IMG/VR virus record: IMGVR_UViG_3300026078_000017
Span: 186,001 to 250,000 of that record
Length of the DNA stretch: 64,000 nt
Reading direction: 5' to 3' (one strand)
In this document: positions 22,414 through 51,724 of the stretch, in pieces
Numbering within the stretch: the stretch's first letter is position 1
How the letters are laid out: each line of letters starts with the position of its first letter
Program-made: the position numbers and the translations under genes
The notes under the pieces: generated by a model
Seen by the model: only the letters and a program-made list of their open reading frames with translations
The model's database searches: none
Told to the model about the DNA's origin: nothing

Positions 22414-23852
22414 TTTGCGCTTGCCTTTGTGATTTTGATGTTTTTCATCAAGTGAGCCGTAATGTCCATTGGAAGTTTTGCAACACTTGGGTCAATTTTA
22501 ATTTGCTTCTGTTCAAAGAGCTGTTGAGTAGCTTCCTGTTGATTCTTTGGTTGTGGATTTGGATTATCGATGAGAGAAAGACTCCAAGTCTTTGGTTTGT
22601 TTGCCTTGTACTTGAGGATTGTGTCTTCAAGGGTTCTATCCCAGTCAGCAACCATCTTCTCATAAGAGAACTCAAAGTTCGTGTACTCAAGTAGCTTCTG
22701 CTTCATAGCTACTTTCTCTTCTGGTGTGTACTCGTAAACCTTCATGAAGGCATCCACAACCTGTTGGTGATTTGTGAAGTCTTCATAAATGTATGGAACC
22801 ATCTGAGAACCAACGAGCTGTTGACTTGCTGGTGGAATGGCTACTCCGTTTTCTGAGCCGTCTCTGTGATCAATGACCTGACGAGTCAAACCACCAGTGG
22901 TAAGAGCAATGATTGGCTTACCAACCATCATCTGAATCAAGGTAGACAAACCAAAACCTTCAGCCTTGGCAATGTTGATTAGAACGTCAGACATGTTGTG
23001 AACGATGTTCATGTCACTTGGATTAAGCTTTTCTGTGGAGAACATCAGGTGCTCTCTAAGACCATAGAGATTGCTTACCTCAGCCAAGTTGCCGCCTTCG
23101 ACGTCAAATGGATCTGTGTGCATAATCATCATGGCTTTTCTGTGTCCATGCTTTTTTTCAAGAGCATCAAGGAACTCACTGAAGCATGCAATGACATCAG
23201 AGCCCATTTTACGATGAGCATTTCGGTTAACCCACAAGACCTTGAACCAGTCAGCCTTGTCTCCGAACTTGCCAGTATTGAACTCCGTCATCTTTTCTTC
23301 AGGAAGTGGATAGTAGATTTCCTTTGGAAAGCTGTGAGGAATGTAGTTCGTCTTCTCAGGGAAATGAGGCTGAACTAACTCATATGTCTTATATGCAAGA
23401 CAGTTGATGAGGTCAGTTGAGTTGTACCAAATCTCATTGAACTTTGGATATGGACCATTATCCCACACGTGCCAGTAAACAAGTGGAGCGAGTTGATGAA
23501 TTTCATCCAAGACTTCCCAGGTCCAAATGAACTGACGTGGATCAGTAAACAAGAACACAGCATCTGGACGCTCTGACAACAAGATCTGACGAAGTTGTTC
23601 CTTCGTACCAAAACCATCAACTGGTTTGATGATCATGTCAGGATGTGGTTGAGATACACGATAATCGGAGTGCTTCTGTGCACCACCCAAACAAACAAAC
23701 TTGTACTTGCCGGTATTGAGTAGACCATTGAACAATGCGCCAGCCTGGACGCCTACACCTGAGGTAGACAAAGGATGATCGCAAAGCGTTAAAATCTTGA
23801 ACTTCTTTTTGGGAAGTTGTGCCTGTATGTCGCTTGGGTTAAATCCGGTCAT
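22410..23852 (-). CDS. Glycosyltransferase, GT4/GT-B fold
   Basis: SGVG N-terminus; NRNAHRK; AEGFGLSTLIQMMVGKPII motif. Confidence 0.85.
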   Translation of the reverse strand: MTGFNPSDIQAQLPKKKFKILTLCDHPLSTSGVGVQAGALFNGLLNTGKYKFVCLGGAQKHSDYRVSQPHPDMIIKPVDGFGTKEQLRQILLSERPDAVFLFTDPRQFIWTWEVLDEIHQLAPLVYWHVWDNGPYPKFNEIWYNSTDLINCLAYKTYELVQPHFPEKTNYIPHSFPKEIYYPLPEEKMTEFNTGKFGDKADWFKVLWVNRNAHRKMGSDVIACFSEFLDALEKKHGHRKAMMIMHTDPFDVEGGNLAEVSNLYGLREHLMFSTEKLNPSDMNIVHNMSDVLINIAKAEGFGLSTLIQMMVGKPIIALTTGGLTRQVIDHRDGSENGVAIPPASQQLVGSQMVPYIYEDFTNHQQVVDAFMKVYEYTPEEKVAMKQKLLEYTNFEFSYEKMVADWDRTLEDTILKYKANKPKTWSLSLIDNPNPQPKNQQEATQQLFEQKQIKIDPSVAKLPMDITAHLMKNIKITKASAK

Positions 23853-25855
23853 TTCTTTGTTTCCATTTCAAGTAACAATGTACGCTGTCTATCGCTCGTT
23901 ACTGTGTCTTTCATTAAGTTCATCAAGTCATCTTGATACATTATTTTGGCAAGTTCCTTGAACTTTACTTTTGGTTCCCAACCAAGAATGTTTCTTGCTT
24001 TTGTTGGGTCGCTTTCAAGATGCGTAACTTCATGAGGTCTGAGTTGTTGTGGGTCGAACACTACGTATTTTTCCCAATCTAGCCCTGCTTGTTCAAAAAC
24101 TGCAATTACAAACTCTTTTACAGAGTGACTTTCTCCTGTGCCAATAACGAAGTCATCTGGAACATCATGTTGAAGCATTTTCCACATGCACTCCACGTAC
24201 TCTCTGGAGAAACCCCAGTCACGCTTGGCGTCAAGGTTACCCAGAAGAAGCTTGTCTTGTTTACCCAAGGTAATGTTTGCTACAGCCTTTGTAATCTTTC
24301 TTGTTACGAAGTTTTCGCCACGTCTTGGAGATTCATGATTATGTAAAATACCAACGGCAATGAACATTTTGTATGCCTCACGATAGTTCACACAAATATT
24401 ATGTGCAGCTACCTTGGCACAAGCATAAGGACTTGCTGGCATGAAAGCGGTCTGTTCATTCTGAGGATGTTGGGGATTGAAACCAAACTGCTCAGAAGAA
24501 CCAGCCTGATAAATACGGGTATGAGGAATCAAAACCTTTGCTGCGTTGAGAAGTCTGAGGGTTCCCATGGCAACAACATCAAATGTCTCTTCAGGACAGT
24601 CAAAGCTGACTCTTACATGAGACTGAGCTGCTAGATTGTAAATCTCATCAGGCTTGTATTCTTCCAAAATCTTCCACAGGGAACTTGAATCCTGCATGTT
24701 TCCATAAACAGAAATGAAGTTTGGATGTTCGATTATGTTCTTCATCCATGGGTGCATGCTTTGGGAGTTTCGACGAAACATACCAACAACGACGTAGTTC
24801 TTCAAAAGTAAGAACTCAGCAAGGTAGCTTCCATCTTGACCAGCCACTCCAGTGATTAAGGCGACTTTACGGTGAGTGTCTTCTTTTTTCATGTTTGGAT
24901 TTTTATTCTGGGTTTCCAAGAAGAAATCATAAGCATTTTTTAATGAATCTTCGAAGGTAATTTTAGGCTTCCAACCCAATTTTGTCTGTCTTGACACATC
25001 CGAAAGTTTTTGAAACATTCCATCAGGTCTTGAGGTGTTGAAGGCAAACTTGATTTTTTGTTCAGAACCTACCTTGGTTTCCCCAGTAAGAACCTCAACA
25101 GCCTTTTCATAGATTTCCTTGATACTCAGGTCATATCCAGTAGACACGTTCATGATGTCTGGAACTTCATCGAACTTATCCAAGGAGAAAAAGATAAAAT
25201 CTGCTAAGTCAGCAGCATCCATGAACTCTCTTCTTGGTGTGCCAGTTCCCCAAATCTCAATATAAGTGTCAGACTGTGTTTCCAGTCTTATCTTGGCCTC
25301 ATGAACCTTACGAATGATGGCTGGAAGAAGATGGCTTGCTTCAGGGTCAAAGTGATCCCATCTACCAAACAAGTTGCAAGGAATATAGGTTTTATATGAG
25401 ACACCCTTTTCTTCAGAAGCATACTGACAGGCTCTTTGAACTGCATTTTTAGCAATCGCGTAACCTTCATTGGTTGGCTCAAGAGGACCAGTGAACAGAT
25501 ACGACTCCTTCATTGGCTGTTGAGCCTCACGTGGATACATGCAGGTAGAACCAAGATTAATCATCTTGGATACCCCGAGCTGTTTTGCAGCTCTTACCAC
25601 ATTCAAACCCATGGTGATGTTATCCATCATGAAATTGAACATGTTGGTTTTGTTGGCCTGAATGCCACCAACCAAGCCAGCCGTGTGAATGATGAGGTCT
25701 GGCTTGGTAATGTCTATTGTCTCAACAACTTGAGCAAAGTTCAACAAGTCGAGGTCCTTGCGTGAGGGAGCAATGATTTCGTGTTGTTGAGCTGCTGGAT
25801 GTTCTAGGATATTTCTTCCTACCATTCCAGTGCCACCAGTTAAAAGGATCTTCAT
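23849..25855 (-). CDS. fcl-gmd: Fused GDP-L-fucose synthase (Fcl/GMER, about aa 1-315) and GDP-mannose 4,6-dehydratase (Gmd, aa 322-668)
   Basis: Two Rossmann motifs (TGGTGMVG; ITGVAGQDGSYLAE). Fcl motifs STCMYP, YAIAK, WGTGTPRREF; Gmd motifs NLAAQSHV, SSEQFG, SPYACAK, NHESPRRGENFVTRKI. Confidence 0.92.
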   Translation of the reverse strand: MKILLTGGTGMVGRNILEHPAAQQHEIIAPSRKDLDLLNFAQVVETIDITKPDLIIHTAGLVGGIQANKTNMFNFMMDNITMGLNVVRAAKQLGVSKMINLGSTCMYPREAQQPMKESYLFTGPLEPTNEGYAIAKNAVQRACQYASEEKGVSYKTYIPCNLFGRWDHFDPEASHLLPAIIRKVHEAKIRLETQSDTYIEIWGTGTPRREFMDAADLADFIFFSLDKFDEVPDIMNVSTGYDLSIKEIYEKAVEVLTGETKVGSEQKIKFAFNTSRPDGMFQKLSDVSRQTKLGWKPKITFEDSLKNAYDFFLETQNKNPNMKKEDTHRKVALITGVAGQDGSYLAEFLLLKNYVVVGMFRRNSQSMHPWMKNIIEHPNFISVYGNMQDSSSLWKILEEYKPDEIYNLAAQSHVRVSFDCPEETFDVVAMGTLRLLNAAKVLIPHTRIYQAGSSEQFGFNPQHPQNEQTAFMPASPYACAKVAAHNICVNYREAYKMFIAVGILHNHESPRRGENFVTRKITKAVANITLGKQDKLLLGNLDAKRDWGFSREYVECMWKMLQHDVPDDFVIGTGESHSVKEFVIAVFEQAGLDWEKYVVFDPQQLRPHEVTHLESDPTKARNILGWEPKVKFKELAKIMYQDDLMNLMKDTVTSDRQRTLLLEMETKK

Positions 25856-32609: not shown

Positions 32610-33416
32610 TCACCTCTTTACAAAAGTCAAAGGTACTAGTTGATGAGCCGACTTGTTCTTGATTCTTTGGAATGTTTTAATGTCAATCTTCTTGCCTTCA
32701 TTCCACAAGCTAAGCAAGTCTCCTTCAGAACCTCCACCAAACACGTTCTTTACTTCAGACTGCACACGGTTATGGGGAACGTTGAAAACTCTCGATACCG
32801 TGAAACAAGCCATCTGTGGATGAGGAATCTGATTGTGAAGGTGAGACATGTTTCCTTCAAAGGTATTTGGGGATTTCCAGTCACCACTGTTGTTCATGGC
32901 AAACAAGGCGTCTGTCCTACGAAACACGTGCCCATCTACGGACAAAGGGTAATTCCAGTCCCAGTCTGTACCCTTCCAGTTCCACACAAAGAATGGTTCT
33001 TTGGTTACGCCTGCATGTGGAACACTCTGTCTTGATTGTGTGGAATAACAAAAATCTAGGTGCTTGCCAAGTCTGAGACTAAAGCAAAACACTGGAAGGT
33101 TGCCTCCAAGAAATCTTGTTATCAGGTCAAAATCCACATTATCCTTAAACACGTCATCGTCTGTGAAGTACACGACATGTTCCTTGGCTCCATTCACAAG
33201 ACCCATGGTTTGTGTGCGAAAGTCAAACTCAGGATGAAAGTTCACTTTTGGGAAAGCCTGTTTCGCCTGTTCCATAGGCCAAATATACTCGTGGTCAGCC
33301 TTGTAAAGGACATTCACATCTGTAGGATCCATGTTCGAGTTATAAAACATGGACTCCAACAGAGCAAACAACTGCATTGGTCTGTTTTTAGAAAACACAA
33401 TTGCGGTAATGTTCAT
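32610..33416 (-). CDS. Putative GT-A fold glycosyltransferase
   Basis: FSKNRPMQL, YFTDDD, YPLSVDGHVFR; cluster context. Confidence 0.55.
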   Translation of the reverse strand: MNITAIVFSKNRPMQLFALLESMFYNSNMDPTDVNVLYKADHEYIWPMEQAKQAFPKVNFHPEFDFRTQTMGLVNGAKEHVVYFTDDDVFKDNVDFDLITRFLGGNLPVFCFSLRLGKHLDFCYSTQSRQSVPHAGVTKEPFFVWNWKGTDWDWNYPLSVDGHVFRRTDALFAMNNSGDWKSPNTFEGNMSHLHNQIPHPQMACFTVSRVFNVPHNRVQSEVKNVFGGGSEGDLLSLWNEGKKIDIKTFQRIKNKSAHQLVPLTFVKR

Positions 33417-34414
33417 AGTGGATGTTTCTCGCACCAGTCTTTCATGATTTCAGGTGCGTTTCTCAAAATCTTGACAGAAGGAGTTGTGGAACCATCCCAA
33501 GGACTGTGGAAAATCCATCCGCCAGTCTTGTCGCGAAGTTCCTTTGCCTTGGCTTCAATCATCTCATCCGTAACCTGTTCCCAGGGAACATCAAAGAAGA
33601 CATTCGAGGAACGATTGATGTCATTATACATTGACTTCCAGAAATCCCCAAAGAAGTGCTTATACTTCTCAATCTTGCCCTTGATGCTGTACCAGGAATA
33701 GTGATACACCGTTGGCAAACCAAAACTCATTTGATTATACCATTTTTCATAGGCTTCAAGAGCCTTAGGATCTTTTAGGGCTGCCATTCTCAAGGACTCA
33801 AGTTGACTATTCATGAAGTTCAAACTTGGAACCGGAAGTCCTTGTTCTTTATTGATATAGTCACAGGTGTCCGTTCCTGGCTTTGCATAAACTAGTCCGT
33901 TGACAACCTGACGATGTGTAACCGGCATACCATGAGTAATGCCTGGGTGATTGCGACTTACACGCCACTTCCATGGGTTGATGTCCACACGAACTTTGTC
34001 TGGACCGCCCCAAAACTCCACAACTGGCAAGCACAACAGAGGAACATCCTCAAGGTTTTTTGCTTGAACAATCAAGTTATCCAAAATAGGTCTGTCAGAG
34101 GCATGAACGACTTCATCACAGTCCATCTGCCAAAGATAGTCGCCTGTACACTTCTCACGAGCTGCTTGCTTGAGCACACCATCATACACTCCGTGGTTTG
34201 GAGCATTCCAGTCCATGTCGGCATAATAAACAAAGAGCTTACCTTTGTTGGCTGCCATCATGTCTGCGAGAACTTTTCTCGTGTCATCGGTTCCGTCCGA
34301 GGAGTCCATTACAACGACTTCATCACAGAAGTCGATAAGAGACTGAATGGACTCCCTAAAAGGGTAATCCATGGCAATGCAGTTACGAGTGGTTGTATAT
34401 CCAGATAGTTTCAT
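33413..34414 (-). CDS. GT2-like glycosyltransferase
   Basis: YPFRESIQSL..FCDEVVVMD...DDT, KQAAREKC, WQMDCDEV (DxD). Confidence 0.75.
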   Translation of the reverse strand: MKLSGYTTTRNCIAMDYPFRESIQSLIDFCDEVVVMDSSDGTDDTRKVLADMMAANKGKLFVYYADMDWNAPNHGVYDGVLKQAAREKCTGDYLWQMDCDEVVHASDRPILDNLIVQAKNLEDVPLLCLPVVEFWGGPDKVRVDINPWKWRVSRNHPGITHGMPVTHRQVVNGLVYAKPGTDTCDYINKEQGLPVPSLNFMNSQLESLRMAALKDPKALEAYEKWYNQMSFGLPTVYHYSWYSIKGKIEKYKHFFGDFWKSMYNDINRSSNVFFDVPWEQVTDEMIEAKAKELRDKTGGWIFHSPWDGSTTPSVKILRNAPEIMKDWCEKHPL

Positions 34415-34422
34415 TTGATTCC

Positions 34423-35286
34423 TTACTTGCAATGTTCAGTCATGTAATATGGACAATACTTGCATGAGTTTCTATTTTTGGTGAAAATCTTCTTTTCGAC
34501 AGACCCAACCATTCTGTAGATGTTCTCCATTGCCTTTTCGATTGCCTTCTCACCAACCGACACAGGCACGAACTCGATGTGCTCACCTGGCTTTGCTGTT
34601 CTCTTGAGAAGAACCCAGGCACATCTAACCTTTTCGATTGGAACATTATTCTTGGCACACCAGAAGTGCTTGTAAAGCACAAGCTGCATCTGTTTCATTT
34701 GGTCACGCTTCTTGTCCCCAGTCCAACCCCAGTCGGTTGTCTTCCAGTCAATAATCCAATATTGCTGTTCAATCTCTGGTTCCTTCTTACGCTTGTCGAC
34801 CTTCTCACACTCAAGGACACAGTCAATAAAGCCCTTGAAGTAGCGGTTCTTCTTTTTTTCTAGACTTTCGAACAAGTCGTACTCAGCAGCAATGATCTTG
34901 TAGTTCTGAAAGTTCTCCTGAAGAAATCCTGGAAGTTCCTCAAAAATAGGCTTGACTGTGGCAGCCCACACAGCAGGGTCATCCTTGAACTCAGGGATTG
35001 CCTTGAGAACCTCAATGACCTTCTCGCCTGTGACAACAGGGTCTAGTGGAGCCTTGCCAAGCAAATACTGCTCAATGGCATCATGGAGCGTTCCACCAAA
35101 CTCTGTGTGTTGGGTTGGCTTGTCCTCCCCAAGTTTATCGATGTGCTTCAACTTGTGACGAAAGGAACACTCGAACCAATCTGTGAACTCGGAATAGGAC
35201 ACATGCCACTTCAACGTTGGAAGTGGGTTGCCCTCAAAGATCATTGGTAACTTGATTTTTTCTTGTTCTTCTGTTATTTCAGACAT
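34423..35286 (-). CDS. PD-(D/E)XK exonuclease (RecB/Cas4-like, probable Fe-S)
   Basis: SYSEF...C, G..LH..IE, E..L, GFID, IIDWKT, Q...Y, C-terminal CKYCPY...C. Confidence 0.85.
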   Translation of the reverse strand: MSEITEEQEKIKLPMIFEGNPLPTLKWHVSYSEFTDWFECSFRHKLKHIDKLGEDKPTQHTEFGGTLHDAIEQYLLGKAPLDPVVTGEKVIEVLKAIPEFKDDPAVWAATVKPIFEELPGFLQENFQNYKIIAAEYDLFESLEKKKNRYFKGFIDCVLECEKVDKRKKEPEIEQQYWIIDWKTTDWGWTGDKKRDQMKQMQLVLYKHFWCAKNNVPIEKVRCAWVLLKRTAKPGEHIEFVPVSVGEKAIEKAMENIYRMVGSVEKKIFTKNRNSCKYCPYYMTEHCK

Positions 35287-43952: not shown

Positions 43953-45311
43953 TCAAAGAATCTTAGCAGCCAAGGTTGCCAACTCAGAACGTTCACCCTT
44001 TGTAAGTGTGACGTGACCTGAGATCTGTTCTTTTTTGAACTTCTCAATAGCCACCGTCAAACCGTTAGAAAGACTGTCCACGTAGGTGTTGTCGATCTGC
44101 TCAATGTCACCTGTGAGAACGATCTTGGTGTTTTCGCCAACTCTCGTAAGAATCGTCTTCAACTCATGGGCATTGAGGTTCTGAGCTTCATCGATAATCA
44201 TGAAAGCATTGGAGATACTTCTGCCACGAATGAAGGTCATTGCCTCAACTTCAATCGTACCTTCCTCGAAGTACATGTTCAAGGTCTCTTCAATGTTTCT
44301 GGATTTTTTACCAGAAGCACTCAACAAGAAACGCAAGTTGTCCTTGATAGGAGCAACCCATGGTTCCATTTTCTCTTCAATGGTACCTGGAAGGAAACCA
44401 ATGTCTTTACCCATTGGCTGAACTGGACGACAAACCACAAGACTCTTGTACTTCTTCTTTTCAAGAACAAGCTCCAAGCCTGCTGCGATTGACAACAAGG
44501 TTTTACCACAACCAGCCAAGCCTGCAAGAGTTACGAGTTTGACATCTGGGTCAAGAAGCAACTGAAGGGCGAATCTCTGTTCTTTGTTCTTTGCTTCCAA
44601 CTTACCAAGTTTCATTACATCATCTACCAAGTAGAGAGGTTCATCCTTGGAAACGAAACGTACAAGTCCAATAGACTCTTCATCAGACTCCGTGTCTTCT
44701 AAAACAAGGAACTGATTTGGAAGCAAGCCCCACTCATCTACCTTACCTGGGTGGATTTCAAGACACTTATCAGCGTAAAGTTTGTCAATGTCAAAATCTC
44801 CCTTAAGAGTCTTGACACCCGAGTACAAACTAGAAACTGATGTGGTTGCTTGAGCCTTTTTATAGTCTTCACACTCAAGACCAAGAATATCTGCCTTGAG
44901 TCTAAGGAGTGTGTCTCTTGTTACCAAAACAAGTTTTTCCTCTGTCTTAGCAGCGACGATTGTCTGACACAAGGTAAGGATGGAGTTGTCTCCAGACTGT
45001 TTGCCTGCAAGTTCGACTGGGAGAGCTTGTGGAGCTGCATTCACAATGTCATCAACAGACAAGATTCTAAGGGTGCCACCATTATTGAGAGCAATGCCGG
45101 TTTTAAGTGCCTTGTCATTTTTGGTAATATCTGCCAACTTACGAACAGTCTCACGGGCATTTCTACCAACTTCGTCTTGACGGTCCTTGTGACGATCGAG
45201 TTCCTCAATAACAATCAAAGGCAAAATGACGTAATTGTCTTCAAATGAAAAAAGTGCTTCTGGATCGGAAAGTAGAACGTTCGTGTCAATAACAAAAGTT
45301 TTCTTGGCCAT
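43953..45311 (-). CDS. phoH: PIN-PhoH (PhoH2/YlaK-type) ATPase
   Basis: N-terminal PIN (VIDTNVLL, EELD, D..IL, VTRD..LR.KA); Walker A GLAGCGKT; RGRS; IIDEAQN; LTRVGENTKIVLTGDIEQID; ERSELA. Confidence 0.93.
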   Translation of the reverse strand: MAKKTFVIDTNVLLSDPEALFSFEDNYVILPLIVIEELDRHKDRQDEVGRNARETVRKLADITKNDKALKTGIALNNGGTLRILSVDDIVNAAPQALPVELAGKQSGDNSILTLCQTIVAAKTEEKLVLVTRDTLLRLKADILGLECEDYKKAQATTSVSSLYSGVKTLKGDFDIDKLYADKCLEIHPGKVDEWGLLPNQFLVLEDTESDEESIGLVRFVSKDEPLYLVDDVMKLGKLEAKNKEQRFALQLLLDPDVKLVTLAGLAGCGKTLLSIAAGLELVLEKKKYKSLVVCRPVQPMGKDIGFLPGTIEEKMEPWVAPIKDNLRFLLSASGKKSRNIEETLNMYFEEGTIEVEAMTFIRGRSISNAFMIIDEAQNLNAHELKTILTRVGENTKIVLTGDIEQIDNTYVDSLSNGLTVAIEKFKKEQISGHVTLTKGERSELATLAAKIL

Positions 45312-45376
45312 TTAAATACACTTATCCCTTCGTACCAAAGAGGTACTAGATACACGGTCACCACTCACTCAACCAG

Positions 45377-45613
45377 CTACTCAGACTTAGGTTTTCTTTT
45401 CACTTTTGCGCTTTTGTCATCCGCATTATTTGCTTCAATGTCAATAAGTTGCGTAGGTTCACTAAAGTGCACAAGTGCATTTTTATGAACTTTCTCTTCG
45501 GTTGTATCACTAATGGGTTTTGTTTTCTCAACAAATGTTCCACTTGGGCCAACTTCGACATTGAGCGGATCTAAGCCTCTTATAAGAAGGTCACGTTTTA
45601 TCGTTCCTAGCAT
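45377..45613 (-). CDS. Hypothetical protein (78 aa)
   Basis: ATG preceded by TATTTAAGGAC. Confidence 0.55.
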   Translation of the reverse strand: MLGTIKRDLLIRGLDPLNVEVGPSGTFVEKTKPISDTTEEKVHKNALVHFSEPTQLIDIEANNADDKSAKVKRKPKSE

Positions 45614-45629
45614 GTCCTTAAATAGAGCC

Positions 45630-46154
45630 TCAACCTACAAAAAGATCCCACAAGAACTTACCAATTGCTGATAATAGGCCAGTTAGGACAAAACCGCCAA
45701 ACCACCAAGCACCCTTGCTAAGTTTGACTGCCTTCTGCAAATCCTTGTTGTCTTCTCCAGCAACCTTTTGGATTTGTTTAATCTTGCTGTCTGTGTCGTC
45801 AGTTCTCTTTTCAACCGAGGAAACTCTAATGTGCATCTTTTCATCAAAGTTAGAAAGGGCATCTACCTTATTGGTAAGGTTTGCAATCATTCCTTCAGAC
45901 TTGTGAAGCTTGGAGTAAATGCCATCTTCAGGGTCATAGAGACGATCAAGCTTTTCCTCAATGCGGCTGTCGTTCTGTTTGTGAGATTCAAAGTCGACGT
46001 TCAACTTGGCTTGCATACTCTTGATTTGAGACACCTCAGCCTCAAGTCTATCAAAGCCTCCGTTTAACACTTTGGCCGATCCAATCTTCTGATTGATTTG
46101 AGTTAGAAGTGCCTTGATTTGCTGGTCGTTTTCGTTGTCGTCAATTTTGGCCAT
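45630..46154 (-). CDS. Coiled-coil protein with C-terminal membrane anchor
   Basis: Long heptad region ending in AWWFGGFVLTGLLSAIGKFLW. Confidence 0.55.
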   Translation of the reverse strand: MAKIDDNENDQQIKALLTQINQKIGSAKVLNGGFDRLEAEVSQIKSMQAKLNVDFESHKQNDSRIEEKLDRLYDPEDGIYSKLHKSEGMIANLTNKVDALSNFDEKMHIRVSSVEKRTDDTDSKIKQIQKVAGEDNKDLQKAVKLSKGAWWFGGFVLTGLLSAIGKFLWDLFVG

Positions 46155-46208
46155 TACATCCCCCAAGTGAATACAACGATAAATATAAACAACAGACTGA
46201 TAAATAAG

Positions 46209-47612
46209 ATGACATCAACAACAACCTTCGTTGACAGAGAAGACTATCAGAAACAAATTCGCCTGTTATCTGAGGAGATTTTAACCAAATACAATGGAAT
46301 TTCTTCACTTTTAACAGAGGACTTGACCGCACTAGATTCTAATACTCTCCATCTTATTGGTAAAGTTTTACGCTCGAATTCACCTCTGGGGGTGAGTTTT
46401 TGTAAGCTCCTTGGTAACTCTTTGTTACAGGCTGAGTCACTAGCTGGCAACTCTGCCAACATTGGACTCATCTATTGCCTGAGCCTCCTTAAGAACGTTT
46501 TGGCATCAGATACCCTAAAAGGCATGTCAGATGTTGCACTTCTGTCTCAATATGAGACAATTCTCCTCAAGCTAAAAGAAGCCATCGAAAACAGCTATCA
46601 AGTTCCTAACTTGGAAGACCTGGAGCAGATTATCGAAAAGGTGTGTGAGGATCGTCTGTTGGCACAGGTTGTCGTTGGAGCAATGAAGGTTGCCGGACTT
46701 CAAGGAAAGATCTACTTTGAAAACGGCAGACAGCACAACTTTGTCGTAGAACGTAGAACTGGGTACAACTTCAAAACAAAACCCTACAAGTTCTTCTTGG
46801 ACTCAAGTGGAGTCTGGGAAAGACAGAATGTAAGGGTTCTGTTGATTGATGGTGTTCTTGAGCAGGTATCTGAGATTGATCAGATTTTGAATGCCGCTCT
46901 TACAAACAAACAGTCAGGTATGATTGTGTGCAGAGGTTTCTCTGAAGAAGTTATTGCCACTCTCAAGGCCAACTTTGACAGAGGACTAATCGACGTCATG
47001 CCCGTCAGAATCAACTCTGACCTGGAGTCCATTAATATTCTCAATGACATGGCAAGTGTGTGCGGCTGTGATATTGTTTCTTCCCTTAAGGGCGATTTGA
47101 TTTCTTGTGTAAAGTGGGATAGTCTTCCTGTTATCAACAAGGTTAGATGTCTTCTTGACAAGACAACCATTGAGGAAGAGAAAACCAGAAATAGTGTCAA
47201 TGCCCAAATCAAACACTTGTTGGCTAAAAGATTTGACAACCAAAACTTGGAAGACGTTGTGAACCTGATTGACGAGAGAATCAAGGCTCTAACCTCTGAG
47301 TCTGTTATTGTTAGACTTCCAGTTATGACCCATCTTCAAAACCAAACAGCAAAAGGGAAGTTCGATACTTCCCTTCGTACAGTCAAGGCAGTTTTGAATA
47401 ATGGCCTAATGACCTTTGGTGACCTGAGAAACAATTTTAAACCAAATAATACTCCACTCGACAGAGCAGTACTTCAAAGCCTAGAAGAAACCCTAAAACA
47501 TTTTGAGAATGTCAAGGTTTCTTCCTTGTCAGCTTACTTGGCCTTCAATGTTTGTGGTAAACAAACGTTGATGATTGCCTCAACTAACGGTGCTATTGTT
47601 GAGGAGGACTGA
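46209..47612 (+). CDS. GroEL/Cpn60-like chaperonin with degenerate ATP-binding motifs
   Basis: G..F apical entry, LLIDG.L..VSEI..IL, IVCRGFSEEVIATL.AN..RG, LNDMA..CG, ERI..L, C-terminal LMIASTNGAIVE; GDGTTT replaced by GNSANI. Confidence 0.75.
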   Translation: MTSTTTFVDREDYQKQIRLLSEEILTKYNGISSLLTEDLTALDSNTLHLIGKVLRSNSPLGVSFCKLLGNSLLQAESLAGNSANIGLIYCLSLLKNVLASDTLKGMSDVALLSQYETILLKLKEAIENSYQVPNLEDLEQIIEKVCEDRLLAQVVVGAMKVAGLQGKIYFENGRQHNFVVERRTGYNFKTKPYKFFLDSSGVWERQNVRVLLIDGVLEQVSEIDQILNAALTNKQSGMIVCRGFSEEVIATLKANFDRGLIDVMPVRINSDLESINILNDMASVCGCDIVSSLKGDLISCVKWDSLPVINKVRCLLDKTTIEEEKTRNSVNAQIKHLLAKRFDNQNLEDVVNLIDERIKALTSESVIVRLPVMTHLQNQTAKGKFDTSLRTVKAVLNNGLMTFGDLRNNFKPNNTPLDRAVLQSLEETLKHFENVKVSSLSAYLAFNVCGKQTLMIASTNGAIVEED

Positions 47613-49272
47613 TCTTCCAACCAGCCTTTAGAAGTGCACTGAGAACTTGCTTGTTGTTTTGGATTGGACCACCAGCAATCTGTGTAACCTTCGCAGCCAT
47701 GTCATCGACGTTTGGAGCGTTTGGCTGACCTGGAGGAGTTTGTTGCTGTCCTGCTTGTGGAGTAGGACTTGCTGTGTTTTGTTGATTTGTCTGTTGAACT
47801 TGGGATGCTCCATTTGGCGGTGGAGGTGCCGCACCCGCTGTTCTCTGAGCCTGATTAGAAGGCTGAGAGCTTTGGGTTGGAGCTGCCTGTCCCGCTGGAG
47901 TTGTACCAGAAGCCTGTTGGGTTCCTTGGGATGCGTTTTGACCTGGGGTGATCGGGTGACCTCCCTTGTCCATGCCTGGAGGAAGTTTTAGACCATTGAG
48001 CCTGGTGAAGAAGTTCTCAAGGTGTTGAACTGTTGCCTGGTCATTTGCAGCAGTTCCTTGTTTCAAGACATTTATCAAGTCTGTCGTGATGGCTTCTGGA
48101 CGAAGAGCAGGATCAGTTGTGCCGGACTTAAAGAAGTTAGAAATTCTCTTGAATAGATTTTGACCAACACCCTTGTTGATGAGAGCTTCCAGTTGTTGAA
48201 GTTCTTGATCATTTAGTGGTCTGTTATCAGGCAGCAACTGATTGATTTTTGGCCAAAGTTCAGCAAGCTTCTCGAAGTAGTTGTAGACGATGTTTGCAGT
48301 TGCAGCCACACCCTTGATAGATGGATCAAGGAAGTTCTTTTTGCCTGAGGCAGCAGCCAAGGCTTGACCACGAAGCTTTTCGAGAGCAGCACCAGTTGCC
48401 TGGAGTTCTGGAAATTGCTTGATGATGGTAGAAATCTTCTGGAGTCCCTGATTGACTCTTTGAAGCTGCATAGCAGGATCTTCGCCTGCTTCCTTGAGGA
48501 AGGCTTCTTCCTCTTCTGTCAGAACATCGCCTCCCTCAGGTGCTTTTGGGTTTGTGCCTGTCGCTGCCTCCATCGCAGGAGCTGCCATTGGAGCTGCTTC
48601 TGCCTTTTCTGGAGTAGCTACAAGCGGAACCTTGTCAACAGACATAAGTTGCTTGAAGTCTCCGGCACTCAGGTTCAAAAGTTCATCTGCGATTTTCTCA
48701 TAGTCCAAGGTTGGAAGTTCCATGGACTTGTACATCCTCTTGAGGATTTCTTGGACTTCATGACCTGGAACCAAGGCATGAAGAATCGCCTTCTTCATTC
48801 TTTCAGCCTCTGCAAGATCCTTGAGAGGTGTGGTTGGGTTCTCGATAGCCTTTCTGAAAATAGGGAACTCCAACATGGACTTCATGTCTCTGTTGAAGAA
48901 CCTCGAAAGGTTGTTGTAAAGCAAGGACATGTACTTTACCATGTAGGTTGCTGGTTCCTTGATTGACTCTTTTTCCTCATCTGTCAAACGAAGACGACCA
49001 TCCGCACGGGTGATCTTCTCGCCCATGGTAATACGGTTCATGAGTTCAACAGCATCGTCAAGGCTTTTCTTGACTTCTGGAACTCTTGCTGCAAACGGAG
49101 CAAATACTGAGTCAAACTTCGAAATTGAACTCTGGAGTCTCTGGAGCGCCTCACGATTAAAAGTCTCGTTGAGCAACAAAACGTTTTCCATTACCCAAGA
49201 AACAGCGGCTTCGTTTATCGCTTTATTCTTTTGGACTTTAAACTTGCCATACTCTTCTCTAAGTGTTACCAT
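47593..49272 (-). CDS. Helical protein with Q/P/A-rich tail, possible internal head protein
   Basis: 559-aa ORF with upstream TATTTA motif and several [LI]xE motifs. Confidence 0.55.
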   Translation of the reverse strand: MVTLREEYGKFKVQKNKAINEAAVSWVMENVLLLNETFNREALQRLQSSISKFDSVFAPFAARVPEVKKSLDDAVELMNRITMGEKITRADGRLRLTDEEKESIKEPATYMVKYMSLLYNNLSRFFNRDMKSMLEFPIFRKAIENPTTPLKDLAEAERMKKAILHALVPGHEVQEILKRMYKSMELPTLDYEKIADELLNLSAGDFKQLMSVDKVPLVATPEKAEAAPMAAPAMEAATGTNPKAPEGGDVLTEEEEAFLKEAGEDPAMQLQRVNQGLQKISTIIKQFPELQATGAALEKLRGQALAAASGKKNFLDPSIKGVAATANIVYNYFEKLAELWPKINQLLPDNRPLNDQELQQLEALINKGVGQNLFKRISNFFKSGTTDPALRPEAITTDLINVLKQGTAANDQATVQHLENFFTRLNGLKLPPGMDKGGHPITPGQNASQGTQQASGTTPAGQAAPTQSSQPSNQAQRTAGAAPPPPNGASQVQQTNQQNTASPTPQAGQQQTPPGQPNAPNVDDMAAKVTQIAGGPIQNNKQVLSALLKAGWKISPPQQ

Positions 49273-49329
49273 GAGATTTCCTCTTGAAAGTGCATCTAAG
49301 CATAAGTAAATAGGTAAGAATACCCCAAT

Positions 49330-50010
49330 ATGCCCATCGATATAAAACCAACCGGAAAAACAATTTCCCTAGAAGAGCTTCTTCGAAAGGAAAATGCTGT
49401 TTATTTGCCCAAGCCTATGATTTCCCGACCAAATTCCCCAAGTGTGGAAAATGAGGAAGACAAGGTTCCAAGCAAGTTTTACTTGCCAGTCCTGAGGATT
49501 AATGACCCAACACAGTGGGAATCGAAACCCCTGAGCGAACGAGTACACTTCACAGATGAGGTGGCAAAGAAGACCTGTCTAGGAAACTGTTGTGGTGTCA
49601 AGGACTTGCGTGCCGGGTGTTGTCAGCTCGACGTGGACGAGGGAGACATGGAGCACGTTCTAGGTCCGGTGGATGAGGACTGGATCAAGAAAACAATCCA
49701 CTGGATGAAAAAGAAGGGATTGAACGTGACAAGACACGATCTTGTGATAGACTACGATGAAGGTAAACTAATCGGGCAACAGTTCTTTCACGATCACGAG
49801 GTCTTCAAACAGAAGGACACCTATCCAATCTTACGCATCCAGGCCAACGGAAAACGCTTTGCCTGCAAATTCCTAAATGTTCATAATGGTATGTGTACCA
49901 TTTACGAACAAAGACCGAACATGTGTAGAGACTATTTATGTGAGTATGTGAAGTCGAACTTCCTTGCAAGGACCAAGGAACACCCGAATACGTATAAAAA
50001 GCTAAGGTAG
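49330..50010 (+). CDS. YkgJ-family Cys-cluster (Zn/Fe-chelating) protein
   Basis: CLGNCC....AGCC; CKFL....GMCTIYEQRP.MCRDYLC. Confidence 0.8.
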   Translation: MPIDIKPTGKTISLEELLRKENAVYLPKPMISRPNSPSVENEEDKVPSKFYLPVLRINDPTQWESKPLSERVHFTDEVAKKTCLGNCCGVKDLRAGCCQLDVDEGDMEHVLGPVDEDWIKKTIHWMKKKGLNVTRHDLVIDYDEGKLIGQQFFHDHEVFKQKDTYPILRIQANGKRFACKFLNVHNGMCTIYEQRPNMCRDYLCEYVKSNFLARTKEHPNTYKKLR

Positions 50011-50945: not shown

Positions 50946-51419
50946 ATGAGAGACTACGTAAAGCACCTTATTCAATGCAAGTGCATTCTGATGCAGTTTC
51001 GTCAGATGCCAGATCCTCCTTTTCACAAGTTCATTGTGTTCTCGGAAATCGAACCCCCGGGCATTATAGTAAAATCTATTGTCCAGTGCCCGAACTGTGG
51101 TGCGGTTCACCGAGTAAAAGAAGTCGGAGTCAGTGAAGTCCTTCGTAAGGAAGATGCCCCAAGCATTCTGACAATCGAGGAAATCAAATCCTCCCTGCCA
51201 GAGAAACTGGTTGCAGGATTTTCAGGGTATGACCTTGAACTCCACCAGTGGATGGAAATCAAGTGGATCCTAGACAATGAACAGTGGGGCAGAAACGTCA
51301 TTCTCACAAAAGACTCTGCCGATGGTCTTGTCACAGGAAAGTATGTCCAAATCATATCCAAGGACATTTGGCGATTTAACAACTTCTCCCGTGAGGAGAT
51401 GATTGCAGAGAAGACATGA
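50946..51419 (+). CDS. Zinc-ribbon hypothetical protein
   Basis: QCKC and CPNCGAVH motifs. Confidence 0.65.
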   Translation: MRDYVKHLIQCKCILMQFRQMPDPPFHKFIVFSEIEPPGIIVKSIVQCPNCGAVHRVKEVGVSEVLRKEDAPSILTIEEIKSSLPEKLVAGFSGYDLELHQWMEIKWILDNEQWGRNVILTKDSADGLVTGKYVQIISKDIWRFNNFSREEMIAEKT

Positions 51420-51724
51420 CAGACACCAAAGAACAAACCCCAGCAGAGTTTTGGGAAGAAGAACAACCAGATCAGGTTTACATCAAACCACGTCTAGAGA
51501 TGAATCTTTCCCCAAAGCAGAAACAAGACTGTAGAGACATTGCCCTGGAGATTCGTAAGTTCGGAATCAACTACAGACAGAGATTGTTTCTGTTGGAACT
51601 CCTTGCCCTTGAGTGCGAAGATAATAACCTCATCCGAGATATCAAGGCTGCCATTGAGAAGTCCAGGGAGACTTTCGGCAAGCAACAGGAATCCGGGTTG
51701 ATTATTCCTGGGTCAAACGACTGA
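51416..51724 (+). CDS. Hypothetical protein (102 aa)
   Basis: ATGA overlap with the upstream gene. Confidence 0.65.
   Translation: MTDTKEQTPAEFWEEEQPDQVYIKPRLEMNLSPKQKQDCRDIALEIRKFGINYRQRLFLLELLALECEDNNLIRDIKAAIEKSRETFGKQQESGLIIPGSND

What the first reader, a model, noticed from the sequence alone, without database searches (positions are those of the whole stretch)
46209..47612. GroEL-like chaperonin that has lost its ATP-binding motifs
Seen: equatorial-apical-equatorial order is retained, but AGDGTTTA aligns to AGNSANIG and the EEGVVAGGG region to NNGLMTFG. No GroES-like gene is in the window; the gene is inverted relative to its neighbours. Known: characterised phage chaperonins (EL gp146, OBP) keep GDGTT and hydrolyse ATP. 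Inference: an ATP-independent holdase, a structural scaffold, or a dominant-negative/hetero-oligomeric partner that reprograms host GroEL.
Basis: partly seen in the sequence, partly recalled or inferred. Interest (0 to 1): 0.6.

Follow-up and report, generated by a model that had tools for sequence, protein, structure and literature searches.

The report
Dead-ATPase GroEL paralogue of jumbo phages
This gene encodes a protein with the full fold of the GroEL folding machine but none of its ATP-binding parts; it is conserved across an uncultured group of giant phages that also carry a normal GroEL, so it is a working "pseudo-chaperonin" whose job is not yet known.

Summary
Pfam gives no hit. The family profile matches solved GroELs at E 1e-35, and the AlphaFold model matches at Z 28 over 461 residues. 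Every nucleotide-binding element of GroEL is substituted or deleted, and the equatorial domain is about 60-90 residues shorter.

New findings:
- The window lies in a 320-kb phage record from a rhizosphere metagenome. That record also encodes a canonical GroEL with intact motifs and a GroES, both outside the window.
- The protein belongs to a virus-only family: at least 132 IMG/VR loci, down to about 25% identity, and none of the 80 fetched loci has the ATP motifs.
- All seven records that are at least 57% complete also carry a canonical Cpn60.
- Conservation is strongest in the apical domain, where two groove residues have become charged.
- The gene keeps conserved neighbours, including a tail-anchored coiled-coil protein at its 5' end.

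It is not a pseudogene. The most likely role is an ATP-independent binding or adaptor module that works beside the phage's own chaperonin. I could not establish ring formation, partners or clients. I found no prior description. I rate it a new variant of a known kind, of moderate to high interest.

The parts
46209..47612 (+). Gene for the degenerate GroEL paralogue ('dGroEL', 467 aa, P0002), stop codon included
   Evidence: ORF and start. GroEL homology. GroEL fold.
46209..46589 (+). N-terminal part of the equatorial domain (aa 1-127). The N-terminal strand (aa 4-9) and a low-confidence hairpin (aa 32-42, at the place of the GroEL stem-loop) are kept. The phosphate-binding turn (T30-P33), K51/D52 and the GDGTT loop have no equivalents.
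   Evidence: DSSP and pLDDT of the model. Alignments with the phage's canonical GroEL.
46443..46466 (+). AGNSANIG (aa 79-86), at the place of the AGDGTTTA phosphate-binding loop. The family consensus here is S-G-G-S followed by variable residues.
46590..46757 (+). First intermediate-domain segment (aa 128-183). I150-S151-A152-N153 of GroEL is replaced by V145-C146 plus a 2-residue deletion.
   Evidence: Boundaries are taken from the structural alignment ranges.
46758..47303 (+). Apical domain (aa 184-365), the best conserved part of the family. It holds the invariant residues D214, G215, E222, L227, E247, T251, N255, N276, D280 and G295. Groove residues: L234 to D224, L237 kept as L227, L259 to I249, V263 to K253, V264 to A254.
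   Evidence: Family conservation. Apical-domain superposition: Z 24.7, rmsd 1.9 A over 178 residues. Gap-free alignment across this stretch with the canonical GroEL.
47304..47399 (+). Second intermediate-domain segment (aa 366-397, helix M equivalent). The catalytic D398 of GroEL corresponds to T387. The neighbouring E397 position is an Asp (D386) that the family conserves.
47400..47609 (+). Reduced C-terminal part of the equatorial domain (aa 398-467). NNGLMTFGD (aa 397-405, nt 47397-47423) replaces the EEG..GGG turn. About 25 and about 43 residues of GroEL are missing, including the N479-A481 hairpin and D495. The final beta-strand is kept in all subgroups.
45630..46166 (-). Conserved 5' neighbour 'o178' (P0052; likely start at the ATG that gives aa 5). 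It is a coiled-coil protein with a C-terminal transmembrane helix, so it is tail-anchored. It lies directly beside the 5' end of dGroEL in 48 of 80 loci. It is divergently oriented in the window's subgroup and co-directional, immediately upstream, in distant subgroups. It is a possible partner; this is not shown.
47593..49272 (-). Convergent 3' neighbour 'o559' (P0055). Its C-terminal half is rich in P, Q and A. It overlaps the 3' end of dGroEL by 20 bp. It is conserved only in the closest subgroup (16 of 80 loci).
50946..51724 (+). Conserved downstream pair 'o157' (Cys-pair, zinc-ribbon-like; 72 of 80 loci) and 'o102' (37 of 80 loci). They are linked to dGroEL across the whole clade. Function unknown.
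43953..45311 (-). PIN-PhoH gene, within 6 kb of dGroEL in 68 of 80 loci.

Best explanation
Shown. The gene encodes a member of a conserved family, found so far only in virus records, of catalytically dead group I chaperonin paralogues ('pseudo-chaperonins'). The family belongs to an uncultured clade of jumbo phages. The protein keeps the three-domain GroEL fold, with near-canonical apical and intermediate domains. Its equatorial domain is eroded and has lost every element that binds or hydrolyses ATP in GroEL. The phages that carry it also carry a canonical, motif-intact GroEL elsewhere in the genome.

Inferred. The protein cannot run the ATP-driven GroEL cycle. It most likely acts without nucleotide, as a binding or adaptor module. 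Its strongly conserved but re-surfaced apical domain would hold a specific phage protein, either a client or a partner, rather than unfolded proteins in general. It would act beside, or hand over to, the phage's own chaperonin.

The model places the apical domain in the raised position that GroEL reaches only with ATP and GroES. This suggests a fixed 'open' state; it is a prediction only.
For: Homology and fold.

Loss of all nucleotide-site elements across the family: none of 80 loci has GDG[TS]T or GxGGG; the consensus and representative rows are.

Selection: at least 132 IMG/VR loci. Intact ORFs of 386-509 aa occur in 80 of 80 fetched loci. There are 13 invariant and 23 nearly invariant columns, mostly apical.

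No cellular members were found. Of 8 ESM Atlas clusters without Pfam families, the three listed are 95-100% viral. The genome-contig scan gave only two hits, at 22-23% identity. GenBank phages gave none.

Co-occurrence with a canonical Cpn60: 7 of 7 records at least 57% complete, and 12 of 23 records overall. The canonical copies keep their motifs.

Groove changes L234 to D and V263 to K lie in a gap-free, well-anchored alignment.

Conformation, with a control: dGroEL has TM 0.77-0.78 to GroES-bound subunits and 0.49 to apo. The phage's canonical GroEL, folded the same way, has TM 0.76-0.81 to apo/ATP states and 0.58 to GroES-bound ones.

Conserved gene neighbourhood.
Against: There is no direct evidence for any client, partner or oligomeric state. 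The homodimer prediction gave no verdict.

The N- and C-terminal strands and the stem-loop position that build GroEL rings are retained. This fits a ring subunit as well as a free adaptor.

The predicted conformation comes from a monomer AF2 model, and the control model rests on only 5 sequences (pLDDT 72.9).

No expression data exist; the only sequencing run holding the locus is the source DNA sample.

A new nucleotide-binding mode cannot be excluded from sequence alone.
Confidence: 0.5

Rival explanations
1. Hetero-oligomer subunit. dGroEL inserts into the heptameric rings of the phage's own canonical GroEL as a non-hydrolysing subunit. This would resemble specialised subunits in chloroplast Cpn60 alpha/beta or in CCT. 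It would tune allostery or client choice.
For: Strict co-occurrence with a canonical Cpn60 in near-complete genomes. The N-terminal strand, the stem-loop position and the C-terminal strand are retained in all subgroups.
Against: The equatorial domain, which makes most ring contacts, is cut by about 60-90 residues here and by more in the roughly 400-aa subgroup. The two genes are about 98 kb apart and not co-located. dGroEL is no closer to its own phage's GroEL than to bacterial ones: BLASTP is not significant, while phmmer to T. thermophilus gives E 1e-11. There is therefore no sign of co-evolving paralogues. This was not tested by modelling, because the pair exceeds the size limit.
Confidence: 0.15
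2. Static lid or cage. dGroEL is frozen in the GroES-bound-like conformation. It either forms a passive hydrophilic chamber or caps the phage GroEL, replacing a co-chaperonin.
For: Predicted cis-like conformation, with a same-method control in the opposite state. The groove is made polar. Cpn10 was not detected in 4 of the 5 large records searched (G001-G004), all of which have a canonical Cpn60 and dGroEL.
Against: The window's own genome has both a Cpn10 and dGroEL. The Pfam Cpn10 search would miss gp31-like co-chaperonins. The conformation is a monomer prediction only. There is no support for self-association (no verdict).
Confidence: 0.1
3. Membrane-associated or structural complex with the tail-anchored coiled-coil neighbour o178. 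The GroEL fold would be reused as a scaffold, for example at an assembly or replication site on the membrane.
For: o178 sits at the 5' end of dGroEL in 48 of 80 loci, despite a change of orientation and other rearrangements. In distant subgroups the gap is only a few to about 30 bp on the same strand. o178 has a coiled coil and a C-terminal transmembrane helix.
Against: Adjacency alone is weak evidence. o178 was not detected in 32 of 80 loci at BLASTP E 1e-5.
Confidence: 0.1
4. Decoy or inhibitor of the host chaperonin system. It would sequester host GroES or poison host GroEL rings.
For: The GroEL-like apical domain is retained.
Against: L234 to D and V263 to K remove hydrophobic contacts that GroEL uses for the GroES mobile loop (the roles of these residues come from established GroEL mutagenesis, recalled from memory). 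The family spans very diverse phages and so probably diverse hosts. The phage supplies its own GroEL.
Confidence: 0.07
5. Decaying pseudogene, or a chance ORF.
For: There is no Pfam hit, and the motifs are lost.
Against: Full-length intact orthologues occur in 80 of 80 fetched loci with invariant residues. The fold is predicted with confidence. The profile E-value is 1e-35.
Confidence: 0.01

Closest known systems
Canonical group I chaperonin GroEL/Cpn60 (E. coli GroEL, T. thermophilus Cpn60; Pfam PF00118, TIGR02348)
   Same: The three-domain fold and domain order match: Z 28.4 over 461 residues. The apical domain superposes at 1.9 A. Profile homology is E 1e-35. Many structural residues of the apical and intermediate domains are kept.
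   Different: All nucleotide-site elements are lost. The equatorial domain lacks about 60-90 residues. Two groove residues are charged. There is no C-terminal tail. Scores fall below the Pfam and NCBIfam thresholds.
Characterised phage chaperonins (Pseudomonas phage EL gp146; also OBP gp246 and AR9 gp228)
   Same: They are phage-encoded GroEL homologues of large phages.
   Different: Those proteins are active, ATP-dependent chaperonins. For EL gp146 see PMC7185714; for AR9 see PMC9598537, found. Here the ATP site is absent, and the protein is a second copy beside a canonical phage GroEL. tblastn found no family member in GenBank phages.
Chlamydial GroEL2 (Ct604) and GroEL3 (Ct755)
   Same: They are extra GroEL paralogues kept beside a canonical GroEL1. 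They diverge in the ATP-binding/hydrolysis and GroES-binding regions and do not complement GroEL function (PMC1892554). The NCBIfam model 'variant chaperonin GroEL3' also hits dGroEL weakly (E 3e-11).
   Different: They are cellular and full length (about 500-540 aa). By my recollection (not checked here) they are still recognised by Cpn60 family models. dGroEL is viral, much more divergent, carries large equatorial deletions, and is not specifically related to them.
GroEL apical-domain 'minichaperones' (fragments 191-376; PDB 1kid, 1la1, 1fy9)
   Same: They give a functional analogy: an apical domain can bind polypeptides without ATP or rings. The dGroEL apical domain superposes on them at Z 23, rmsd 2.2-2.6 A.
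   Different: They are engineered fragments with the native hydrophobic groove. dGroEL is a natural full-length protein with a partly charged groove.
Viral GroEL/GroES of the virioplankton (Marine et al. 2017, PMC5649160)
   Same: That work is a metagenomic survey of phage chaperonins. It shows that large phages commonly carry GroEL with or without GroES.
   Different: A term search of that paper for ATP-binding, GDGTT and paralogue found no mention of ATP-site loss or of a second GroEL-like paralogue.

Membership tests
Group I chaperonin GroEL/Cpn60 (PF00118, TIGR02348) | Significant sequence similarity to the family | tested here: met
   phmmer against PDB GroEL gives E 1.4e-11. The family profile gives E 1e-35. 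hhalign against the phage's canonical GroELs gives probability 99.3%.
Group I chaperonin GroEL/Cpn60 (PF00118, TIGR02348) | Score above the curated family thresholds | tested here: not met
   There is no Pfam hit at E up to 1. NCBIfam GroEL models score 29-64 bits against cut-offs of 352-1041 bits. A PF00118 search of the genome finds only the canonical copy.
Group I chaperonin GroEL/Cpn60 (PF00118, TIGR02348) | Equatorial-intermediate-apical three-domain fold | tested here: met
   The AF2 model has pLDDT 86.8. Foldseek gives E 1e-26. VIA gives Z 28.4 over 461 residues.
Group I chaperonin GroEL/Cpn60 (PF00118, TIGR02348) | Nucleotide-binding elements: T30-P33, K51/D52, G86-T91, I150-S151, D398, G414-G416, N479-A481, D495 | tested here: not met
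   All are substituted or deleted in P0002 and across the family. The same elements are intact in the phage's canonical GroEL.
Group I chaperonin GroEL/Cpn60 (PF00118, TIGR02348) | Hydrophobic helix H/I groove for substrate and GroES (L234, L237, L259, V263, V264) | tested here: not met
   By alignment the five positions are D224, L227, I249, K253 and A254. Two of the five are charged, and the family consensus keeps the D and the K. The functional meaning is inferred.
Group I chaperonin GroEL/Cpn60 (PF00118, TIGR02348) | Heptameric ring (single or double) | tested here: inconclusive
   The homodimer prediction gave no verdict (score 0.00). The ring-forming strands and the stem-loop position are retained in the model.
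Group I chaperonin GroEL/Cpn60 (PF00118, TIGR02348) | ATPase activity and ATP-dependent folding | not testable with these tools
   This needs biochemistry.
Chlamydia-type variant GroEL paralogues (NF038369 GroEL3) | Score above the model cut-off, or specific relatedness | tested here: not met
   The score is 42.8 bits against a cut-off of 600. That is no better than the general GroEL models.

The most novel reading that the evidence does not exclude
A whole clade of jumbo phages carries a nucleotide-free GroEL derivative locked in the shape that normal GroEL reaches only with ATP and GroES. It would work as a passive cage, as a lid or co-factor for the phage's own GroEL, or as a membrane-tethered docking platform through its tail-anchored neighbour. 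That would be a chaperonin architecture working without an ATP cycle, which has not been described.
Probability: 0.12. Interest if true: 0.85.

Novelty: new variant of a known kind. Interest (0 to 1): 0.55.

Why it matters
GroEL is a textbook ATP-driven machine, and known phage chaperonins keep the ATPase. This is a widespread and strongly conserved viral paralogue. It has discarded the whole nucleotide pocket and part of the equatorial domain, kept and re-surfaced the apical domain, and always sits beside a normal phage GroEL. That shows the GroEL fold has been reused for a second, ATP-independent job.

It offers a natural test of what a chaperonin scaffold can do without its motor. It may also reveal a dedicated assembly factor or client-delivery step in giant phages. 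In practical terms, the family is invisible to Pfam and is labelled 'hypothetical' in most records. It could now be annotated.

Tried and rejected
1. Complex prediction on two copies of dGroEL gave no answer (score 0.00, controls not run). It counts neither for nor against self-association.
2. I could not model the hetero pair of dGroEL with the window genome's canonical GroEL. Together they have 1047 residues, over the 1000-residue limit, and both termini of each chain are needed. I did not try it.
3. The Python machine was lost. I therefore did not finish a maximum-likelihood tree of dGroEL against canonical phage and bacterial GroELs, per-column conservation statistics on the 117-sequence set, or dN/dS. 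The origin of the family (an old duplication within phages or a separate capture) stays open. Pairwise BLASTP to the phage's own GroEL is not significant.
4. The promoter and terminator scan of 45300-49400 found no more sites than in shuffled sequence.
5. GenBank phages hold no near-identical DNA. tblastn found no family member with P0002 or with a short-subgroup member, and no homologue of the conserved neighbour o157.
6. The genome-contig scan gave only two hits at 22-23% identity, which is ordinary GroEL-level similarity. That scan used a single peptide pattern, so absence from cellular genomes is not proven. I did not run the large all-against-all protein search, because the family was already identified.
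7. Expression: the only sequencing run holding the locus is the probable source DNA sample, a rhizosphere metagenome. No RNA run holds it, so I did not use read laying.
8. Literature searches found no description of an ATP-site-less GroEL paralogue in phages.
9. The neighbours o157, o102, o119, o559, o716 and o244 have no Pfam or PHROG assignment.
10. The pseudogene reading is rejected on conservation.
Full report
**The gene.** An ORF on the + strand runs from 46119 to 47612. The first ATG is at 46209 and gives a 467-aa protein, P0002. Orthologues elsewhere start at the equivalent position. GC content around the gene (0.435) matches the rest of the window (0.41-0.48). Nothing marks it as a recent foreign insert.

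**Is it GroEL-like?** Yes, but only remotely.
- Pfam-A gives no Cpn60_TCP1 hit, even at E up to 1.
- PHROG 5725 'chaperonin groEL' matches at E 4e-19 over residues 114-400.
- Seven NCBIfam GroEL models match at E 8e-18 to 4e-07. They score 29-64 bits against cut-offs of 352-1041 bits.
- phmmer against PDB sequences finds T. thermophilus Cpn60 at E 1.4e-11 and dozens of other group I chaperonins.
- A profile of 44 family members (A1) matches PDB GroELs at E 1e-35 over positions 49-402.
- The same profile matches an alignment of the phages' own canonical GroELs (A2) at hhalign probability 99.3%, E 1.5e-20, residues 1-403 against 9-427.
- An AlphaFold2 model built on A1 is confident: mean pLDDT 86.8, pTM 0.71.
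- Foldseek finds GroEL chains at E 1e-26.
- VIA-align gives Z 28.4, rmsd 4.3 A over 461 of 467 residues against 4v4o_G.
- The apical domain alone gives Z 24.7, rmsd 1.9 A over 178 residues against 5cdj_B.

All three domains are present in the GroEL order.

**The ATP site.** I used the phage's own canonical GroEL as ruler (P0051, 580 aa; its numbering is E. coli +10 in the first half). The residue roles are recalled from established GroEL structural and mutational work, not re-checked here. Every nucleotide-contacting element is lost:
- The T30-P33 turn has no counterpart, and the region is 8-13 residues shorter.
- K51/D52/G53 falls in a variable, low-confidence segment that the family does not conserve.
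- A-G-D-G-T-T-T-A pairs with AGNSANIG (aa 79-86). The family consensus there is S-G-G-S followed by variable residues.
- I150-S151-A152-N153 becomes V145-C146 plus a two-residue deletion.
- The catalytic D398 pairs with T387.
- E-E-G-V-V-A-G-G-G pairs with NNGLMTFGD (aa 397-405), and about 25 residues after it are missing.
- A further block of about 43 residues is missing. It includes the N479-A481 hairpin and D495.

The canonical copies in this phage and in four relatives keep all of these elements.

**Genomic setting.** The window is positions 186001-250000 of a 320,479-bp IMG/VR virus record, 81% complete by CheckV. The only sequencing run holding the locus is a rhizosphere metagenome, probably the source sample. 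The window holds a baseplate-like gene, sugar-modifying enzymes, a Prim-Pol, a PIN-PhoH and an RNase H-like gene. Most other ORFs have no assignment.

The same genome encodes a canonical Cpn60 at C1:133998-135632 (PF00118, E 2e-57). It also encodes a Cpn10 at C1:143360-143599 (E 2e-12). Both lie outside the window. 'No GroES in the window' is therefore true, but it misleads about the phage.

The A1 profile finds only two places in the genome. One is dGroEL itself (E 3e-189) and the other is the canonical GroEL (E 1e-19).

**A conserved family found so far only in viruses.**
- The word-index protein search returned 49 relatives at 72% down to about 30% identity. Most are 440-490 aa, with a few shorter, partly truncated entries. 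None has a precomputed Pfam domain. Several lie on contigs of 255-331 kb.
- A scan of IMG/VR found 132 loci, of which I fetched 80.
- In all 80 the ORF is intact (386-509 aa, plus one of 303 aa cut by the contig end). None has a GDG[TS]T or GxGGG motif.
- The ESM Atlas holds eight look-alike clusters without Pfam families. The three listed have 283, 125 and 71 members and are 95-100% viral.
- GenBank phages contain no member.
- A single-pattern scan of 185,579 prokaryotic species genomes gave only two hits at ordinary GroEL-level similarity.
- One member sits in an NCBI assembly (GCA_029980445.1), on a 180-kb contig with the same synteny.

Conservation is concentrated in the apical domain. The invariant residues are D214, G215, E222, L227, E247, T251, N255, N276, D280, G295, R357 and L361, and there are family-specific blocks around aa 220-224, 242-255, 269-281 and 290-296.

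A subgroup of about 400 aa has lost still more of the equatorial domain. It lacks the last long helix, equivalent to aa 439-457, and part of aa 100-125. It keeps the final C-terminal strand. So the equatorial domain is being whittled down while the apical and intermediate core is held. This is the signature of a functional pseudo-enzyme, not of a pseudogene.

**The apical groove.** From aa 210 to 300 the alignment with canonical GroEL has almost no gaps (one single-residue gap near aa 275). It is anchored by shared invariant residues. In this stretch the P0002 number equals the E. coli number minus 10. The five helix H/I residues that bind substrate and the GroES mobile loop in GroEL are L234, L237, L259, V263 and V264. 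They correspond to D224, L227, I249, K253 and A254. The D and the K are in the family consensus. I infer that the groove is no longer a general hydrophobic binding site. That argues against a generic holdase and against a GroES decoy, and for a specific partner.

**Co-occurrence with a canonical chaperonin.** PF00118 searches of the whole records behind the loci found a canonical Cpn60, at a different place from dGroEL, in the following:
- G000-G004.
- 7 of 18 further records of at least 100 kb.
- All 7 records with CheckV completeness of at least 57%, and 12 of 23 records overall.

The misses are fragments of 28-52% completeness. Cpn10 (PF00166) was found only in G000 among the five large records searched. 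gp31-like co-chaperonins would escape that model.

dGroEL is no closer to its own phage's GroEL than to bacterial GroELs. BLASTP to P0051 is not significant, while phmmer to T. thermophilus gives E 1e-11. The split is therefore old.

**Neighbourhood.** In the window the gene is flanked by two - strand genes. One is a divergent 5' neighbour, o178, at 45630-46166. The other is a convergent 3' neighbour, o559, at 47593-49272, which overlaps the gene's 3' end by 20 bp. The closest relatives have the identical layout (L003-L018, L037, L089), so the 'inversion' is ancestral to this subgroup.

Across the clade, dGroEL stays linked to several genes:
- o178, in 48 of 80 loci and always at its 5' end. 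In distant subgroups it is co-directional and separated by only a few to about 30 bp.
- o157, in 72 of 80 loci.
- o102, in 37 of 80 loci.
- PIN-PhoH, in 68 of 80 loci.

o178 is a coiled-coil protein with a C-terminal transmembrane helix. The linkage suggests a functional tie but does not prove one.

**Predicted conformation, with a control.** The dGroEL model superposes well on GroES-bound (cis) subunits: TM 0.77-0.78 and rmsd about 5 A to 4v4o_G and 4pj1_A. It superposes poorly on apo GroEL: TM 0.49, rmsd about 16 A.

I folded the phage's canonical GroEL by the same method. That model has pLDDT 72.9 and rests on only 5 sequences. It behaves the opposite way. TM is 0.76-0.81 and rmsd 4-5 A to apo or ATP-only states. 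TM is 0.58 and rmsd 11-13 A to GroES-bound ones.

So the raised-apical state is not a general bias of the method for GroEL-like sequences. It remains a monomer prediction, and I treat it as a lead. The lead is that dGroEL may be fixed in the shape GroEL reaches only with ATP and GroES.

**Oligomeric state.** The model keeps the N-terminal strand (aa 4-9) and the C-terminal strand (aa 461-466). It also keeps a low-confidence hairpin (aa 32-42) where GroEL has the stem-loop that pairs with the neighbouring subunit. This is compatible with ring formation.

**Interpretation.**
- Shown: this is a conserved GroEL-fold protein, found only in virus records, without a GroEL-type ATP site, and it accompanies a canonical phage GroEL.
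- Inferred as most likely (about 0.5): it is an ATP-independent binding or adaptor module that uses its re-surfaced apical domain on a specific phage protein, beside the phage's own chaperonin.
- Rivals: a non-hydrolysing subunit of mixed rings with the phage GroEL (0.15), a static lid or cage (0.10), a membrane-associated or structural complex with o178 (0.10), a host GroEL/GroES decoy (0.07), and a pseudogene (0.01, refuted by conservation).

**Comparison with known systems.**
- Against canonical GroEL, it is a homologue by fold and profile. It fails the defining nucleotide-site and groove features and the curated thresholds, so I do not file it as a GroEL.
- The characterised phage chaperonins are active ATPases: EL gp146 (PMC7185714), AR9 gp228 (PMC9598537) and OBP gp246.
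- The nearest conceptual parallel is chlamydial GroEL2/GroEL3. These are extra paralogues with divergent ATP and GroES regions that do not complement GroEL (PMC1892554). They are cellular, full length and not specifically related to dGroEL.
- Isolated apical-domain 'minichaperones' show that an apical domain can bind polypeptides without ATP. That is a functional analogy only.
- The metagenomic survey of viral chaperonins (PMC5649160) yielded no mention of such paralogues in a term search.
- Five literature searches found no description.

**Verdict.** I rate the novelty as a new variant of a known kind: a viral pseudo-chaperonin family that current family models cannot see. Interest is 0.55. 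It is a clear, testable case of a chaperonin fold reused without its motor, but its function is still unknown.

Noticed in passing
G000:C1:133998-135632 (+) and C1:143360-143599 (-), outside the window (loci L001, L002): The phage carries a canonical GroEL (580 aa, intact motifs) and a GroES (89 aa). They are about 8 kb apart on opposite strands, not in a groES-groEL operon. The GroEL has a lysine-rich insertion of about 50 residues (aa 498-551) that is modelled with low confidence.
   Followed up: partly
Related record G006 (holds L005), C1:18623-21250: The canonical Cpn60 match is split. Pfam positions 1-62 and 63-487 lie about 1 kb apart inside one 964-aa open frame without stops. This looks like an intein inserted just after the TKDG region of a phage GroEL.
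   Followed up: no
L089:4594-7014 (-); also the enlarged PhoH ORFs in L004, L009, L021, L022 and L028: In several relatives the PIN-PhoH gene is much longer (about 800-1170 aa). In L089 it carries a LAGLIDADG_3 domain between two PhoH matches, which points to an intein in PhoH. The window's copy (43953-45311) has no insert.
   Followed up: no
window:45630-46166 (-): This is a tail-anchored coiled-coil protein with XhlA-like features by language-model look-alikes. It stays next to dGroEL across the clade even though its orientation flips between subgroups.
   Followed up: partly
window:47593-49272 (-): This 559-aa protein has a long C-terminal half rich in P, Q and A. It converges on dGroEL and overlaps it by 20 bp. 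It is conserved only in the closest subgroup (16 of 80 loci).
   Followed up: no
window:50946-51419 (+) and 51416-51724 (+): These are two small overlapping genes. The first has Cys pairs like a zinc ribbon. They are among the most conserved markers of the clade (72 and 37 of 80 loci). They have no Pfam or PHROG family and no homologue in GenBank phages.
   Followed up: partly
window:1-32000 (- strand): This is a long run of large same-strand ORFs (up to 1148 aa). Of the ten large ORFs I scanned, the only PHROG matches were a baseplate wedge-like protein (15422-17263) and a nucleotide-sugar epimerase (23849-25855). The clade is essentially unannotated.
   Followed up: partly
window:35583-36632 (-), 33413-34432 (-): A dehydrogenase-like gene (PHROG 9582, E 5e-89) and a weak glycosyltransferase-2-like gene sit near the epimerase. 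Together they suggest a sugar-modification module in the phage.
   Followed up: no
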